The notes: a model not told the origin generated them from the sequence alone. A DNA stretch of 64,000 nt from Magallana gigas (GCF_963853765.1 NC_088855.1:14818001-14882000); one strand, 5' to 3'. Positions 44,110-50,400 are shown, numbered from the stretch's first letter. Made by a program: numbers and translations.

Positions 44110-44322
44110 TTTTAAATCACCCTTATAAATATCTTTTGAAAATCTGTAACACTGCCGCAATAAGCCAACAGTGGGAAATTTTTCACAAAACAACAAATGG
44201 CCCTATTTTCCACCCCAAAGTATCGTCCCCACCAGCCATATGAAAGTGACGTCATACGACATACGTAGTCAACGTCCAGTCATGACGGTGTCACTATACA
44301 GCTGACTTCTGGTTCCGGGTCG

Positions 44323-44444
44323 CTAACTTGAGTCCGGAGACTCGTTGCTGGTGCTGAACATCGGGTCCATGACGTGTTCCCGGGTCAGGCCGATACTGGA
44401 CCCGGAGGACGTACTCAGGTTCTCATTGCTCCCCACAAACACAT
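44323..44444 (-). CDS. BCAS3: BCAS3 exon 22 (terminal)
   Basis: ttttgacag|[40 protein letters not shown]; phase 1 matches exon 21 and it resembles the vertebrate ETLSNSSGS region. Confidence 0.8.
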
Positions 44445-47400
44445 CTGTCAAAACACAAAAATCGGAATATTAAATCGCCATTCAAACGGACGAGATGAAG
44501 GAGAAGTTATGTTATAGCGTTTCAGCAGCTCATTATTCTACAGTTTAGTATTTTTTTTTATGACAGTAGAAATATTCTTTCATAATTTCGTTTTACGACC
44601 CCTTCGGTAATGAAAGAAAAGTCTCATATCATAATGAAATGTCGCATACATCCTGGTAAAATTACGTGATCATAAAAACTGCTTCTTTGTCCCCATTTTT
44701 AATTTTGAGACGACCAACTGTCCTTAAGGGGCGGGTGAAACAATGTTTTGGAGAATACCCTCCTTAAGGGAGTAAAAAAATACCTTCCCCGGTCAGAGCC
44801 GGTGGCCATTAAATGAATGGCAGGCAACAATCTGACCTACGAAGCGCCAATGTTTTCTCCCCTGTTTCTTTTGTTACGAACGGCAATTAAAATGAAACCT
44901 TAATGACGAAGATTGACAAAGATGTTGATTACAAACTTCATCTCAGGTAACCGGTTCTTCCCTTCTTGTGTTCATTACCTGAGAGTCAGCTAAATAGGCT
45001 GTTAATCCTGAGCTCGTTATTGATGTACCCACCGAGTATACGGATAATGGAGTAGGGGGGCTCGAATTATCATGGCATTAAATAAACCACACACGGAATT
45101 AAGCCCAGAAGAATTGGACGCCATCAGATCACGGGGATGACTGATCAGGCGTCATTAAAAGATAGAGGTGAGTCGCTTAACATCTCTGGGCATCTTAAAA
45201 ACCAGTCTATGTCTTTGATAACCGATTCCTCCTCTCTTTGCTTTGTTGATTATAAAAGAGTTTTAATGACTCTGCAGCGGACAGAAGCAGCTGAGGCCGC
45301 CTGGCGGCCTTTAGCGATACCAAGACGGATGAAAATACATAGCTCTCGTTCTCAAAAGCGACACCGTTTCCAACCACTGCTGGTAATGACAAAAAAAAAA
45401 AGACTGCAAAATATAAAACTCTGACGTGTTGCCTAAGAAGCAGAAATGTTTCAAGGGTTTGTCTCAAGTACTGAAGGAACTAGTTGAAATTTCAACACAT
45501 TCAGTTGATTTGACCATTATAAAGACCGTGAACAAAAACGAAAACATCAATCAACTAAAAAAAACCCCAGATAGTTACTAAAACAACAATATGAAGCAAC
45601 TCAAAGTAGGATATTAAGGAAAATAACAGCCAACAACAACCAGCAGCAGCAACAACAACAACAACAGCCAACAACAACAACCAAGACTTACTCAAATAGA
45701 AACCAGAAACTTAAAAATCAACAACCAAAACCTTGGAAGAAATAAACAACAAACAATAACATCAACCAAGACTTAGAACAACAAACACCTGAAACAATGA
45801 ACACCAACAACCAATCAATGGAATAAAACAACAACAATAAATACAACATACACCCAAGCTAAGTGCAACAAACACCAGAAACTAGAAAAATTAACAACCT
45901 ACAAAAAACAACCTAGAATCAAGACAACATCACAGACCAAGAAAAACAACAAACAGAAAAAAGTTGACTAATTACCAAACTTTAAAACAGGAACAACAAT
46001 CAACAACATCAACAACTTAGAACAACAATATCCAGAAACAAGAAACTCCATCCAAAAAACTAGATTAAGACAACAACAATGAACCACAACAACCAAGACT
46101 AAGAACGACAACCCCCCCCCCCCCCCCCCCCCCCGAAGCTTGAAAATCCAAAATGCAAAAACTAGGACTACAGTCAGCAACTTCTAGTAAAGTAAAACAA
46201 CAACATCAAGTGTTAATCCACTGTTCCCTAGGATTTTGCAATCTTTTTTTGACAGTAAATGTATATGGCATGAAGTAATTCTTCCACAGTATTTTGGTTT
46301 AATCATTCATATTTGAGACTCTTGAAAATCATACCCGGTAATTATTATAAATACATGTAGGAAACTGGTTTTAAATAGAAACTTCGAATCATTATCCTCC
46401 TTTCTTTTTAAAAATTCCCATTCCATTATGATGATTTTAATATATAGTACTTACCAAAAAATCTCAAATAAGATAATTAATAAGTTTTGAAACAAAAGAA
46501 ATTCTAGAACAGAAATATTACATATATTTGAATTTTAGTCTCTCAAACATTGATACAGATGACTTTTACTATCTTGGACTTCTCAACTGACGGTTCATGT
46601 AACCAAGAATATATCAAATTGAGTTTAAAACAAGTCCCTATTTTAAAGTAGTTTGTTTATATATTTTAACCTCTATATCAAATCCCCATTTACTGTAAAC
46701 ATATTACCAGGTACATGTTGTACATTCAGCAATGAATTCTTATCTAGCATTTTGGCAGAAAGTGGCTTCCATTGCTATTATATGCATGAAAAGTACAAAA
46801 TTAAATCTATGTAATCTGTGTGAATAACTAATATCCACCAAATATTTATTTTTTGGTCCATAACAAGGGTTGAAATGAATGTAGACTCTAAATAATTTAT
46901 TTAGTGTGCACTTACTTTAGTCTATCTTTTTGTACAGACATTGCATAAACAGCAAAAAATATTCAACCACACTCTTGAATGCTAATTTGTGGTCTACAAC
47001 TCCGAAAGTCAAGTTGGAAAACAGAAATACTGTTGTTTCATCAATATTCATTGACTGCCTATTTACGAGGACTTTGTTGTTGAGTTAATCCACGAAATCA
47101 AACGTTCAGTTGAAACGGAATTTCCAATACTGTTGAATCATTTAAATTTGTTGGATTTTTGTTTTTTTGCTTATTCGAGGGGATGTAATTTTGTGAATGC
47201 ATGGGTTTTCACAATAACAAAGTAACTGACAATGTTCATTATTTGTTTTTGCTGAGGATGTAAAATAGTGGATGAGGGCTACCCATGATAACCACAAATT
47301 CTAATGCTTCCACAGTAACTTATTTTATTGAGAAAATCATTGGCCACAAATTTAATATCCATGAAATTTTGATATTTTTTTTATGAAAACCAGAAAAATT

Positions 47401-50400
47401 TATGAAACCACAATACTGTGAATGAATGTAAGCTTTGTTTTACAACATACCATGTGATATACAGGAGGGTCCTCCTTCCTTCATGGGGGATTCCAACATG
47501 GCTTCTGCCAAATTCTCTTTCATCTTTTCATCAAATTCTTCACTTCCTCTTGGTTGCTTAGCAACAGTTGATTCTGCCCAACTGCTGTACACATCACATA
47601 AGTTTGGTGACTGGTCAAAACTACCTGGAAGCAAAATCAAATTAAATTTAGATTAACTAGGCAGGCACAATTGTTCACACAAACTCTTCTCTTTTTTCAG
47701 TCTTCTCCAACATTTGATGTACAGTAAAAATTATCCTTGATCTTGTACAGTCTTGTATTTTAAATCCAATAATCTTTCCTTTTATATCATTTTATAAATG
47801 CCTTAATTGGCACTAACCTGCTTCAATCAGTAAGGGAGTGGAGTTTTTTCCTGGAGATGAGGTAGAGTCACTTCCTGTCCGTCTGTATGCAGGACGAGCA
47901 TTAGGCATGGCTACTGGACTCGATCGAGCTGGCTGTATCCTACAGATACATGTATTCCACATAACTTAAAAAATTCCTTCTATAAATTTTTTTCTTTCAA
48001 AATCCTAAACTTACAAATCACCAAACTATAAGATTTTAATACAATTTTTGATCATTACATTAGGACGAAATTCTCACTTGAGACTTTCTAAGTCGACTTC
48101 ATCGGAGGTGATGTCCATGTTGGACAGGTTGACCTCGGGACTCTGGGATAGGAGCGCGGAGGACTGGGAGGATAGGACCGTGGTGTTCTGTACGTTCTGA
48201 TAGGTCTTGAACGAGAACTGGGGGCCCATCCACAGGCGACGATGAGGCCCCATGTGGGTTATTATCTCCACCTACAAAGAAATAAATCATGAAGTTGAGA
48301 TACAAAGATTCTAGCTCTTGTATTCATTTGACCATCATTAAAAATTTTCTGGAATTGCAAAAGGAGTTCAGAATATTCAACTCCAGACCAGTGGAAAATG
48401 AAATTCTATTAAAATTTTACATCCTTAGTACATGTATTTACATTAATGTTGTCATTATTTTCATATTTGCGTGAAGTATGTGTGGTACATGCAGATTCTC
48501 ACTTTTGATCATTCATCAGGTGTCTATGAATTTAAAATATATGTACCTGTGAAAGCCACTCCTCCTGATCAACCCCTTTCTTTTCTTGTTCTGATGTAAG
48601 ACTATCCCTGGAGTCCTGTCTGATGACTGGCAACAAGTCTCCTCCATCTGAAAACCCAAACAGACATCAAACGTTGTACATAAAACAGAGGGAGAAAAAC
48701 TTAAAAAGACTTGTGAGGAGAAATTAAATTGATCAACCAATATGTTTTTACATTCTATAGGCAAATAATGGATACACCCGTAGTAAAATGAGATGCATGT
48801 ACCAAGGAAACCCTCTCTATCTTACACCAGTACTAATAATGTTGAAAAAATGTGTCCAGCATCTAGGGTCTAGTACTTATATTTACATGTAACTTCTAAT
48901 GCAAGTTCTTTCATTTTGCTGCGACTTTATCTCAAACGGTTTATCAAAATAGAGACTACAGAAATAAACAATCACTTTAAAAACTTATAAAGAGTACCCT
49001 CTATATGTAGCATCAAGTGAATATTCACATCAAGTCAAACAATTGCCATGCTCCTTCCTGTATTGTTTATAAATATATTAGCCATCAGAAATAAGTAGTA
49101 CCCTTATTGTAGCTTTAGTAACATCATTAATATGTTCTGCTACAAACATTTTTACATACCGGTATATAGTTCTTCGGAATACTCTAACAGCAAAGAGAAA
49201 TGTATGTAATTTCAAATGCCTTTGCTTGTATATATTTTCTACTATTTGCAATTAGGAAATGAGGTTTGTGACCAAAAGACTGGACACTGTTGATTACCTG
49301 AATGTGAGGAACTAGGTCGCTGAGACATAACCGTGTCAGAGGCAAGGATGAGGGGGTTGTTGTTGACTAGAGGGGGGCGGACTTCATCAGAGGTTTTTGA
49401 CCTGAATAAAAAAGATTACAATCAAAGTTCCCCTATCCCAGGTAATATAAATGCAAACTACTGATTTAAAAAATACTTGAATGCTATAAAAATGCAATTA
49501 CATGCACAATGATGCACAATGGAGCTTTATCATACTCCAACATTAGATATGAAGAGATGTTTAAATATACAAAGGTGTGTGCATGAATGGCTGTAAATTG
49601 TTTGAACTTGATTGCTTTACAGCTAAAGGATGTTTACCTTTCAAAAAACAATTACCAGGTACTACCGGTACTCAGTAGTCTGACATCATTTATTCTATCC
49701 CAAACTGACTCACAGTGTGAAAAATACTTTTTGAAAAGCTGAATATTTAATAAAAATAAAATTGTCTGAAATAGAATATATTTGAATCCTAAATAGATAA
49801 GACAAACTTGCCTCTGTAAATGCCACTGGGTATAACCAGTGATGGTTAAGTCCAGAGGGGTTCCGTCGGTCACTTTCTCTGAGAGTTGCTTGGACTTTGG
49901 GTCCAGTATGTACTCCACTAGGGTCCCTGTCTGACTCATCAGGAACAGGGAGTCCGCTACTCTCTTACCCTCTACAAACAATTCTACAGTTTAAAATATA
50001 TTATACAGCTGTAAATACTTTACTTTACAATTTAATTTATTCAACTCGCTGTAGTTTAACTTATGATCCAGTAAACATATTACATTTAGTACTTATGGTC
50101 TTTGAGGGAATTTTTTAAAAATGTTACATGTATATAAGATTTTATTCAATCTGATTTAAATCGGCGGCACCATTTTTTCTTCCAGTGATCTTGAACTTGC
50201 ACAAATGACCAAAGCTCAAGGTCAGATCAAGAGCGGTTGCATATCAGAGCAGCTGATTCTAATCAGATTGGATTTTATTAAGTGCATTTTTTAAAATTCA
50301 CATCCATGACATTTGGTCATGTGCCGTTCTTTACTAGAAGCTGTGTCCCTCTAAACTTAAATTGATTGATAACATAAACAAGTGAAAAGCTGTCAATGTG

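What the first reader, a model, noticed from the sequence alone, without database searches (positions are those of the whole stretch)
44200..47450. CpG switch inside the last BCAS3 intron suggests the Tbx2/3 regulatory domain extends into BCAS3
Seen (manual counts): most BCAS3 introns are nearly CpG-free (0 CG in 52201-52500; 3 in 46201-46980; exon 21 has 0 in 174 nt). The distal last intron and terminal exon are CpG-rich (12 CG in 44445-44760; 8 in the 122-nt exon 22). This intron (3006 bp) is about three times the next longest. Established: invertebrate gene-body methylation depletes CpG in housekeeping genes, while developmental-gene domains stay unmethylated. Inference: a methylation boundary near 45.4-46.2 kb, with Tbx2/3 enhancers in 44.4-45.4 kb. 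Caveat: exon 19 is also CpG-rich.
Basis: partly seen in the sequence, partly recalled or inferred. Interest (0 to 1): 0.7.

Follow-up and report, generated by a model that had tools for sequence, protein, structure and literature searches.

The report
Conserved element ends BCAS3 CpG depletion
In the Pacific oyster, the CpG-depleted (probably methylated) body of the housekeeping gene BCAS3 stops about 1 kb before its last exon, at the edge of a 0.75-kb non-coding block conserved in four oyster genera. This block is the first of a chain of conserved elements leading to the developmental gene Tbx2/3, a small invertebrate version of the known vertebrate TBX2-BCAS3 regulatory block.

Summary
CpG o/e is 0.95 over window 1-45450, 0.38 over 45451-59400 (the BCAS3 body) and 0.90 beyond. 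The maximum-likelihood change point is at 45,370-45,426, inside BCAS3 intron 21 (44,445-47,450, 3006 bp).

- The CpG-rich distal part of the intron is single-copy in the genome.
- It is the only part of any long BCAS3 intron that aligns between Magallana gigas, Crassostrea virginica, Saccostrea echinata and Ostrea edulis (75-80% identity).
- It shows no codon periodicity. TAAT cores are preferentially invariant (13 of 18, against 22% of all 4-mers).
- It opens a chain of conserved non-coding blocks running towards Tbx2/3.

In all four oysters the CpG switch lies 939-1033 bp before the terminal exon, although the intron varies from 1.8 to 5.9 kb. Scallops show the same coincidence with unrelated sequence, and the ark clam has the switch inside the intron too. 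Mytilus and amphioxus do not.

The CpG-normal domain is about 106 kb and holds two Tbx2/3 paralogues.

Not shown: actual methylation (no bisulfite run was listed), enhancer activity, and the target gene.

This is a new member of a known kind (a regulatory block with a bystander gene) and a well-defined locus for asking what stops gene-body methylation.

The parts
44567..45318 (.). Conserved non-coding block (CNE) in the distal part of BCAS3 intron 21. It is CpG-normal (o/e 0.85) and single-copy.
   Evidence: The blastn block 45303/45318 to 44443 is contiguous with the terminal exon: 79.8% identity to C. virginica, 74.9% to S. echinata, 75.1% to O. edulis. The four-species alignment A1 has an invariant fraction of 0.40-0.78 per 50 columns, as high as the coding exon. 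There is no codon periodicity and the indels shift the frame. TAAT/ATTA cores are invariant in 13 of 18 cases against 21.7% for all 4-mers. It is single-copy.
45348..45706 (.). CpG change point (best estimates 45,370 and 45,426): the inferred edge of historical germline methylation.
   Evidence: Likelihood segmentation. It lies 50-120 bp outside the upstream edge of the conserved block.
44445..47450 (-). BCAS3 intron 21 (the last intron), 3006 bp, GT...AG.
   Evidence: Splice sites read. Spliced mRNA contigs of a close relative join 47,45x to 44,44x. The protein P0282 maps across the junction.
43768..44444 (-). BCAS3 terminal exon 22. The coding part is 44323-44444 (39 codons plus stop), and the 3' UTR runs at least to 43,768. 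It lies wholly in CpG-normal sequence.
   Evidence: Translation. mRNA contigs L008-L011. CpG o/e is 0.81 for the CDS and 0.88 for the UTR.
47451..47624 (-). BCAS3 exon 21 (174 nt), with 0 CpG.
   Evidence: CG positions.
45371..58772 (-). CpG-depleted BCAS3 body (exon 1 to the proximal two thirds of intron 21), inferred to be gene-body methylated in the germline.
   Evidence: CpG o/e is 0.28 in exons 2-21, 0.41 in introns 2-20 and 0.28 in 45371-47448. BCAS3_WD40 and BCAS3 Pfam hits on exons. Exon map.
45520..46135 (.). A/C-rich low-complexity stretch (CAA-type repeats, an 85-bp tandem unit, a 23-nt poly-C at 46112-46134) just inside the CpG-poor side of the switch. It is not conserved in other oysters.
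   Evidence: O. edulis has a TC/TCTA microsatellite at the equivalent place, but C. virginica and S. echinata have nothing there.
47022..47377 (.). Dispersed repeat inside the CpG-poor part of intron 21.
   Evidence: 960 first-look candidates in the own genome, 71-85% identical.
35810..43858 (.). Chain of at least nine conserved non-coding blocks between the BCAS3 3' end and Tbx2/3, as far as the fetched orthologous flanks reach.
   Evidence: blastn against C. virginica, S. echinata and O. edulis, collinear, 72-84% identity. CpG o/e is 1.02 in the blocks and 0.70 in the spacers.
22145..28379 (-). Tbx2/3 gene, on the same strand as BCAS3. Its first coding exon lies about 15.4 kb downstream of the BCAS3 mRNA end.
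   Evidence: Pfam T-box hits on 28005-28379 and 26103-26426. The best solved relative is TBX3 at 188 bits, against TBX5 at 128 bits. CpG o/e is 0.96.
53716..54386 (.). Young, very abundant ~670-bp transposon in a BCAS3 intron. It makes a CpG-rich patch in the depleted body and serves as a positive control for the 'recent transposon' alternative.
   Evidence: 4068 first-look candidates, copies 93-96% identical. CpG o/e is 1.24-1.33. It is not aligned in other oysters.
58597..60016 (.). Second CpG change point, at the BCAS3 5' end (start codon at 58,703; the mRNA reaches at least 58,789).

Best explanation
BCAS3 (minus strand, 22 exons, about 58.8 to 43.8 kb) is a broadly expressed gene. Its body has been methylated in the germline for a long time, so its CpGs have decayed.

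The gene's last 1.6 kb consists of the distal 0.9 kb of intron 21 and the terminal exon. This part lies inside a CpG-normal domain of about 106 kb, inferred to be unmethylated, that holds two tandem Tbx2/3 paralogues and a chain of conserved non-coding elements.

The distal intron segment 44,567-45,318 is the outermost element of that chain. It is most likely a cis-regulatory module rich in homeodomain-type (TAAT) sites that acts on Tbx2/3. Its chromatin state in germ cells and early embryos (bound factors, or Polycomb or H3K4-methyl type chromatin) most likely keeps the de novo methyltransferase out. Gene-body methylation therefore stops at its edge instead of running to the transcript end.

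Shown here:
- the CpG switch and its statistics
- the gene models
- single-copy status
- non-coding conservation
- the coincidence of the switch with the block edge in seven species
- the extent of the domain

Inferred:
- that CpG decay reports methylation
- that the block is an enhancer
- that Tbx2/3 is its target
- the exclusion mechanism
For: - **CpG switch.** o/e 0.95 / 0.38 / 0.90, LR 220, with TpG+CpA excess only in the depleted segment.
- **Selection does not explain the CpG density.** Strongly constrained exons 2-21 have o/e 0.28. The non-alignable spacers of the Tbx2/3 side have 0.70 and the blocks 1.02. Within the intronic block only 4 of 27 CpGs are invariant, against 41% of all dinucleotides, so the CpGs are not what is being conserved.
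- **CpG against GpC retention between oysters.** 0.17-0.26 against 0.50-0.52 in exons 2-21. 0.39-0.50 against 0.37-0.42 in the downstream blocks.
- **Conservation pattern.** Only exons align inside BCAS3, apart from one ~165-bp intron. In intron 21 only 45,303/45,318 to 44,445 aligns, and collinear blocks then run down to 35.8 kb.
- **Non-coding signature.** Variable sites by codon phase are 1/4/27 in the coding exon and 105/107/79 in the block. Indels are of 1, 2 and 4 bases. There are no Pfam or Rfam hits.
- **TAAT cores.** 13 of 18 invariant, binomial p = 6e-6.
- **Switch position in oysters.** 984, 1033, 952 and 939 bp before the terminal exon in four oysters whose last introns are 3006, 2520, 1766 and 5927 bp. 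The switch is within about 50-180 bp of the block edge in each.
- **Scallops.** Pecten has the switch at 53,859 and conserved blocks starting at 53,886/54,014. Mizuhopecten has the switch at 42,128 and the block starting at 42,036.
- **Ark clam.** Tegillarca has the switch 7.1 kb before the terminal exon, inside the intron.
- **Domain view.** CpG-normal from -60.9 kb to +45.4 kb around two Tbx2/3 genes.
- **Published oyster methylomes.** Methylation normally stays on a plateau through the gene and falls only after the transcript end (PMC4378273), so an early stop needs a local cause.
- **Vertebrate precedent.** Vertebrate TBX2 and BCAS3 are spanned by one cluster of conserved non-coding elements, many inside BCAS3 (PMC2745767).
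Against: - No direct 5mC measurement was possible. No bisulfite run was listed and read laying could not be used.
- CpGs inside the intronic block turn over somewhat faster than GpCs (0.21-0.27 against 0.34-0.36, small numbers). Partial or tissue-limited methylation is therefore not excluded.
- No sequence homology of the block was found outside Ostreidae.
- In Mytilus and amphioxus CpG depletion runs 3.9 and 6.8 kb past the gene end, and Pinctada gives no clear switch. The arrangement is therefore not universal.
- Tbx2/3 was not reached in the 10-kb flanks of any other species. The BCAS3 to Tbx2/3 linkage outside this genome rests on collinear blocks (oysters) and on the literature (vertebrates).
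- Nothing here shows which gene the block regulates.
Confidence: 0.68

Rival explanations
1. The conserved block serves BCAS3 itself: an intronic enhancer of BCAS3, or a control region for splicing or 3'-end formation of its terminal exon. Its unmethylated state would then be a local footprint unrelated to Tbx2/3.
For: The block is physically contiguous with the terminal exon in every oyster. A long last intron is a shared feature of bivalve BCAS3 genes.
Against: The 120 bases directly upstream of the 3' splice site are the least conserved part, with an invariant fraction of 0.10-0.34. No other BCAS3 intron carries a conserved block. The block is the first of a collinear chain that continues for at least 8.6 kb beyond the gene, and it shares the CpG state of that chain.
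Confidence: 0.12
2. The block is the promoter or an exon of an unannotated transcript, either a long non-coding RNA or a distal alternative first exon of Tbx2/3. It would be unmethylated because it is a transcription start region.
For: Conserved, CpG-normal, about 0.75 kb, at the edge of a developmental locus.
Against: There is no Rfam family at gathering score, and only a chance-level hit at E = 0.99. No conserved open frame was found. The spliced BCAS3 mRNA contigs show no exon there. The blocky conservation centred on TAAT cores is typical of factor-binding modules.
Confidence: 0.1
3. The CpG-rich state does not reflect methylation at all. Purifying selection on the conserved block, or biased gene conversion, keeps CpGs there, and methylation is uniform across the intron.
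For: CpG o/e is higher in the conserved blocks (1.02) than in the spacers between them (0.70).
Against: Coding exons 2-21 are under stronger selection yet have o/e 0.28. CpGs are the least conserved dinucleotides of the block, 4 of 27 invariant. The unconserved 3' UTR, the 124 bases before the splice site and the spacers are all far above the gene body (0.88, 1.48 and 0.70 against 0.28-0.41). TpG+CpA excess is confined to the depleted segment.
Confidence: 0.06
4. The CpG-rich segment is a recently inserted transposon that has not yet decayed.
For: Such patches exist in this very gene (53,716-54,386).
Against: The segment is single-copy in the 564-Mb genome. It is present at the orthologous place in four oyster genera.
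Confidence: 0.01

Closest known systems
Vertebrate TBX2-BCAS3 genomic regulatory block (Synorth, PMC2745767)
   Same: The same two genes are neighbours. The developmental T-box gene is the presumed target, and BCAS3 is the bystander carrying conserved non-coding elements in its introns. In the oyster BCAS3 lies upstream of Tbx2/3 on the same strand. That human BCAS3 likewise ends just upstream of TBX2 on the same strand is my recollection and was not tested here.
   Different: The oyster version is miniature: about 15 kb between the genes, and only the last kilobase of one intron is invaded, rather than a large array across a 700-kb gene. The conserved sequences are not homologous to vertebrate ones or even to scallop ones. 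The bystander is marked by CpG decay, so the block edge is visible in the raw sequence.
Ancient microsyntenic pairs held by cis-regulatory constraint (Irimia et al. 2012, PMC3514665)
   Same: A developmental regulator and an unrelated neighbour stay linked because regulatory elements of one lie inside the other. Tbx genes are named among the families involved.
   Different: The main text does not mention BCAS3 and its tables were not available. I therefore cannot say whether this pair is already listed. Methylation boundaries are not part of that concept.
Mosaic gene-body methylation of oysters (Wang et al. 2014, PMC4378273; Riviere et al. 2017, PMC5481141)
   Same: A methylated (CpG-poor) housekeeping gene lies next to long unmethylated regions that stay unmethylated from the oocyte onwards and hold silent developmental genes.
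   Different: The average oyster gene keeps its methylation plateau to the transcript end and loses it slowly afterwards. Here the inferred methylation ends abruptly 1.6 kb before the transcript end, inside an intron.
DNA methylation valleys or canyons over developmental genes in vertebrates (from my own knowledge, not checked here)
   Same: A large unmethylated domain covers a developmental transcription-factor locus and its conserved elements, has sharp edges, and is usually Polycomb-marked.
   Different: In vertebrates the valley is an exception in a methylated genome. In the oyster the methylated gene body is the exception, so the question is what stops transcription-coupled methylation, not what protects the valley.

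Membership tests
Genomic regulatory block with bystander gene | A cluster of conserved non-coding elements around a developmental transcription-factor gene | tested here: met
   At least ten collinear blocks from 45.3 to 35.8 kb, conserved in three other oyster genera. The rest of the locus could not be compared because the flanks were limited to 10 kb.
Genomic regulatory block with bystander gene | Some of the elements lie inside an unrelated neighbouring gene | tested here: met
   The block 44,567-45,318 lies in BCAS3 intron 21. The same holds in scallops with different sequence.
Genomic regulatory block with bystander gene | Target-bystander linkage kept across distant lineages | tested here: inconclusive
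   Collinearity is shown for four oysters only as far as 8.6 kb past BCAS3. No T-box was found within 10 kb of BCAS3 in any fetched locus. The vertebrate linkage comes from PMC2745767.
Genomic regulatory block with bystander gene | The elements drive the target's expression, not the bystander's | not testable with these tools
   Needs reporter assays, deletion or chromatin-contact data.
Germline gene-body methylation domain (invertebrate mosaic methylome) | CpG depletion with matching TpG/CpA excess confined to a transcribed gene body | tested here: met
   CpG o/e is 0.38 and TpG+CpA o/e 1.29 between 45,371 and 58,772. The flanks are 0.95 / 1.11 and 0.90 / 1.14. The limits fall at the 5' end of the mRNA and inside intron 21.
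Germline gene-body methylation domain (invertebrate mosaic methylome) | Measured 5-methylcytosine | not testable with these tools
   A run search restricted to bisulfite libraries listed none, so no reads could be laid.
Germline gene-body methylation domain (invertebrate mosaic methylome) | Plateau to the transcript end, slow decline after it (oyster average, PMC4378273) | tested here: not met
   Depletion ends 1.6 kb before the mRNA 3' end. This departure is the finding.
Recent transposon insertion | Multiple similar copies in the genome, absent from the orthologous site in relatives | tested here: not met
   Single copy and orthologous in four genera. The control 53,716-54,386 meets both criteria.
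Protein-coding or alternative exon | Third-position periodicity of substitutions, frame-preserving indels, open frame in all species | tested here: not met
   105/107/79 variable sites by phase, against 1/4/27 in the neighbouring coding exon. Indels of 1, 2 and 4 bases. No Pfam hit on the two longest frames.

The most novel reading that the evidence does not exclude
The edge of the conserved block may be a true chromatin boundary that halts transcription-coupled gene-body methylation inside an actively transcribed gene. This boundary would have been kept by position, not by sequence, in oysters, scallops and ark clams for hundreds of millions of years. Embedding BCAS3's last exon in the Tbx2/3 landscape would then be what has locked BCAS3 and TBX2/3 head-to-tail from the bilaterian ancestor to humans. 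If so, this locus would offer natural replicates for finding the factor that tells the methylation machinery where to stop.
Probability: 0.25. Interest if true: 0.7.

Novelty: new member of a known kind. Interest (0 to 1): 0.5.

Why it matters
What delimits gene-body methylation in invertebrates is an open question. The usual model is that methylation follows elongating polymerase through H3K36 methylation. That model predicts methylation to the transcript end.

Here a transcribed gene appears to lose methylation 1.6 kb early, at the edge of a conserved non-coding block. The same coincidence recurs in seven bivalve genomes, with intron lengths from 1.8 to 19 kb. This gives a compact locus with natural replicates for testing whether regulatory chromatin of a developmental gene overrides transcription-coupled methylation.

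It also shows that CpG decay in the raw sequence can reveal the border of a regulatory block in a mosaic-methylated genome.

Finally, it extends the vertebrate TBX2-BCAS3 regulatory block to a mollusc. That supports cis-regulatory interdigitation as the cause of this old gene linkage.

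Tried and rejected
1. **Direct methylation test.** The look-up of sequencing runs restricted to 'Bisulfite' libraries listed none.
2. **Sequence conservation outside Ostreidae.** All of these found only chance-level hits, apart from the terminal exon in Pinctada:
   - blastn of 29-47.4 kb against Tegillarca, Pecten, Mytilus and Pinctada
   - an nhmmer profile of the four-oyster block against the same loci
   - a small-search-space blastn and searches for the eight invariant oligomers in the scallop and ark-clam distal introns
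3. **Deep ancestry of the intronic switch.** In amphioxus, CpG depletion runs 6.8 kb past the gene. In Mytilus it runs 3.9 kb past. Pinctada gives a weak, diffuse signal.
5. **Alternative 3' ends as the cause.** The shorter O. edulis isoform differs by an internal exon, not at the 3' end.
6. **A shared low-complexity boundary element.** M. gigas has an A/C-rich array and O. edulis a TC/TCTA array at the switch. C. virginica and S. echinata have none.
7. **RNA families.** Nothing at gathering score and only a chance hit at E = 0.99. No tRNA was found.
8. **Bacterial promoter and terminator scan.** Not meaningful for this genome.
9. **Irimia et al. supplementary tables.** These are not held in the library.

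Full report
**What is in the window.** There are no N runs.

Pfam places BCAS3 on the minus strand. BCAS3_WD40 positions 30 to 479 run from 56.5 to 51.0 kb, and the BCAS3 C-terminal domain is at 48.2 kb.

The Magallana gigas RefSeq protein P0282 maps at 100% on most exons. The genome has 564 Mb in 29 contigs, and the window is G000:C3:14,818,001-14,882,000.

Spliced mRNA contigs from public RNA assemblies of a close relative (about 95% identity) align as 22 exons. Their 5' end reaches at least 58,789 and their last exon runs from about 44,444 to at least 43,768. The terminal exon therefore has 122 coding bases, ending in a stop, and a 3' UTR of at least 550 bases.

Reading the splice sites gives these coordinates:
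- intron 21: 44,445-47,450, which is 3006 bp
- exon 21: 47,451-47,624

The next longest intron is 1111 bp.

Tbx2/3 is also on the minus strand. T-box exons lie at 28,005-28,379 and 26,103-26,426, and a 327-codon last exon at 22,145-23,128. The central T-box exon scores 188 bits against TBX3, 128 against TBX5 and 96 against Brachyury. BCAS3 therefore ends about 15.4 kb upstream of Tbx2/3 on the same strand.

| Segment | CpG o/e | TpG+CpA o/e | GC |
|---|---|---|---|
| 1-45,450 | 0.95 | 1.11 | 0.347 |
| 45,451-59,400 | 0.38 | 1.29 | 0.342 |
| 59,401-64,000 | 0.90 | 1.14 | 0.327 |

A three-segment likelihood model puts the change points at 45,370 (support 45,351-45,627) and 58,772 (58,597-60,016). 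The likelihood ratio against a uniform window is 220.

The second point falls at the BCAS3 5' end. The first falls inside intron 21. The depleted zone is therefore the BCAS3 transcription unit minus its last 1.6 kb.

Published oyster methylomes show that methylation normally rises after the start site, holds a plateau through the gene, and falls slowly only after the transcript end (PMC4378273). The early stop here is therefore not the default.

**Is the CpG-rich part a transposon?** No.
- 44,445-45,430 matches only itself in the genome.
- The CpG-poor remainder of the intron holds a dispersed repeat at 47,022-47,377 (960 candidates). It also holds an A/C-rich low-complexity array at 45,520-46,135.
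- The one strong CpG-rich patch inside the gene body (53.7-54.4 kb, o/e about 1.3) is a young transposon with thousands of copies at 93-96% identity. This shows what the transposon alternative looks like. The same paper reports that young repeats are methylation targets.

**Conservation.** I fetched the BCAS3 loci, with 10-kb flanks, of:
- Crassostrea virginica, Ostrea edulis and Saccostrea echinata
- Tegillarca, Pecten, Mytilus and Pinctada
- Argopecten and Mizuhopecten
- amphioxus

Between M. gigas and the three other oysters, only exons align inside BCAS3, apart from one ~165-bp intron bridged between exons 10 and 11. In intron 21 nothing aligns between 47,444 and about 45,320.

From there a single block of about 1 kb runs from 45,303/45,318 through the terminal exon. 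Identity is 79.8% (C. virginica), 74.9% (S. echinata) and 75.1% (O. edulis). Nine more collinear blocks follow down to 35.8 kb, where the fetched flanks end.

In the four-species alignment A1, the invariant fraction per 50 columns is:
- 0.40-0.78 from 45,303 to 44,567, equal to the coding exon (0.70-0.82)
- 0.10-0.34 in the 120 bases before the 3' splice site

The conservation is therefore not a splice signal.

The block does not look coding or like a known RNA:
- Variable sites by codon phase are 1/4/27 in the exon but 105/107/79 in the block.
- Indels are of 1, 2 and 4 bases.
- The longest stop-free stretches are 80-92 codons, with no Pfam hit.
- Rfam finds nothing.

Among all 4-mers of the block, the homeodomain core TAAT/ATTA is the one most preferentially invariant. 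It is invariant in 13 of 18 cases against 21.7% overall (binomial p = 6e-6, before correction for roughly 40 4-mers with enough occurrences). This is the pattern of a factor-binding regulatory module.

**The switch tracks the block edge.** Single-change-point fits give the following.

| Species | Last intron (bp) | Switch relative to terminal exon |
|---|---|---|
| M. gigas | 3006 | 984 bp before |
| C. virginica | 2520 | 1033 bp before |
| S. echinata | 1766 | 952 bp before |
| O. edulis | 5927 | 939 bp before |
| Pecten | 8387 | 3008 bp before |
| Mizuhopecten | 15,519 | 2727 bp before |
| Argopecten | 6298 | 951 bp before (wide support interval) |
| Tegillarca | 18,873 | 7115 bp before (inside the intron) |
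| Mytilus | 6211 | 3851 bp after |
| Amphioxus | about 1400 | about 6.8 kb after the gene end |
| Pinctada | 1100 | weak, diffuse signal |

In each oyster the switch lies within about 50-180 bp of the start of the alignable block.

Scallops repeat the pattern with unrelated sequence:
- In Pecten the switch is at 53,859. Conserved blocks against Argopecten and Mizuhopecten begin at 53,886 and 54,014 and fill the 2.5 kb before the terminal exon.
- In Mizuhopecten the switch is at 42,128 and the block starts at 42,036.
- Argopecten is looser: the block starts about 2 kb before the best change point, though inside its wide support interval.

There is no fixed distance to the transcript end. The switch follows the conserved sequence.

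**Is CpG retention due to selection rather than lack of methylation?** This is unlikely, for four reasons.
- Exons 2-21, which are under strong constraint, have o/e 0.28.
- The unconserved 3' UTR (0.88), the bases before the splice site (1.48) and the non-alignable spacers of the intergenic region (0.70) are all well above the gene body (0.28-0.41).
- Inside the block only 4 of 27 CpGs are invariant, against 8 of 27 GpCs and 41% of all dinucleotides.
- Between species, CpG retention relative to GpC differs by region:
  - exons 2-21: 0.17-0.26 against 0.50-0.52
  - downstream blocks: 0.39-0.50 against 0.37-0.42
  - intronic block: 0.21-0.27 against 0.34-0.36 (intermediate, small numbers)

**Domain view.** Adding 110 kb to the left and 20 kb to the right of the window shows one CpG-normal domain of about 106 kb (o/e 0.96). 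It runs from -60.9 kb (support -60,970 to -60,833) to +45.4 kb, with depleted sequence on both sides.

The domain holds the window's Tbx2/3 and a second Tbx2/3-type gene at about -13.2 to -28.3 kb on the same strand. That gene's central T-box exon is 92.6% identical. The BCAS3 terminal exon sits at the very edge of this domain.

**Comparison with what is known.** In vertebrates, TBX2 and BCAS3 are spanned by one cluster of highly conserved non-coding elements, with a large array inside BCAS3. After the fish genome duplication, the half of BCAS3 next to tbx2a decayed while its elements stayed (PMC2745767). Ancient microsyntenic pairs of this kind are documented across animals (PMC3514665). However, BCAS3 is not named in that paper's main text, and its tables were not available.

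No paper in the library links BCAS3 and Tbx2/3 in an invertebrate. No paper found links bystander genes with gene-body methylation.

The oyster locus is thus a new, compact member of a known kind. It has one unusual feature: the block border can be read from CpG decay and cuts through a transcribed gene.

**Limits.**
- Methylation is inferred, not measured.
- Enhancer function and the target gene are inferred from position, conservation pattern and precedent.
- Linkage to Tbx2/3 in the other bivalves was not verified.
- Motif interpretation rests on the TAAT core only.
- Divergence times are not computed here.

Noticed in passing
L005:25974-26377 (C. virginica), L006:27736-28056 (O. edulis); window 55680-55844: Tandem arrays that repeat the 3' end of an exon together with its splice donor. 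C. virginica has 57 bp x 7.1 and O. edulis 53 bp x 6.1, both at the end of BCAS3 exon 21. M. gigas has none at that exon but has 23 bp x 7.2 at exon 6. These look like independent amplifications of donor-bearing segments in one gene in three oysters.
   Followed up: partly
Outside the window: about 13.2-28.3 kb left of window position 1 (G000:C3 about 14,789,700-14,804,800), minus strand: A second Tbx2/3-type gene in tandem with the window's Tbx2/3. Identity is 92.6% for the central T-box exon, 58% for the N-terminal exon and 38% for the C-terminal exon. Both lie in the same ~106-kb CpG-normal domain.
   Followed up: partly
Outside the window: 60.9 kb left of window position 1 (G000:C3 about 14,757,100): The left edge of the CpG-normal domain is as sharp as the right one (LR 253). 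Just outside it lies an 894-codon retroelement-like open frame (-65.0 to -62.3 kb) flanked by two copies of the same short frame, probably LTRs.
   Followed up: no
window 53716-54386: A young ~670-bp non-autonomous transposon with an internal inverted segment (bases 323-438 of the query also match in reverse). It has thousands of copies at 93-96% identity. It is still CpG-rich inside a depleted gene.
   Followed up: partly
L001:35691-37322 (Tegillarca granosa): The deposited 1311-residue BCAS3 model of the ark clam includes a 544-codon open frame inside the last intron. This frame has no Pfam hit and no counterpart in other bivalves, so it is probably an annotation artefact or a mobile-element frame. 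The species also has a second BCAS3 copy 92% identical (P0163).
   Followed up: no
L014:72356-72689 (amphioxus): Three extra copies of the last ~23 codons of BCAS3 lie in tandem just downstream of the gene.
   Followed up: no
window 50471-50838 and 59740-60040: A 181-bp unit repeated twice in a BCAS3 intron shares peptide-level similarity with sequence just upstream of the BCAS3 start. It is probably another dispersed repeat family. It causes the local CpG o/e rise at 50.5-51.0 kb.
   Followed up: no
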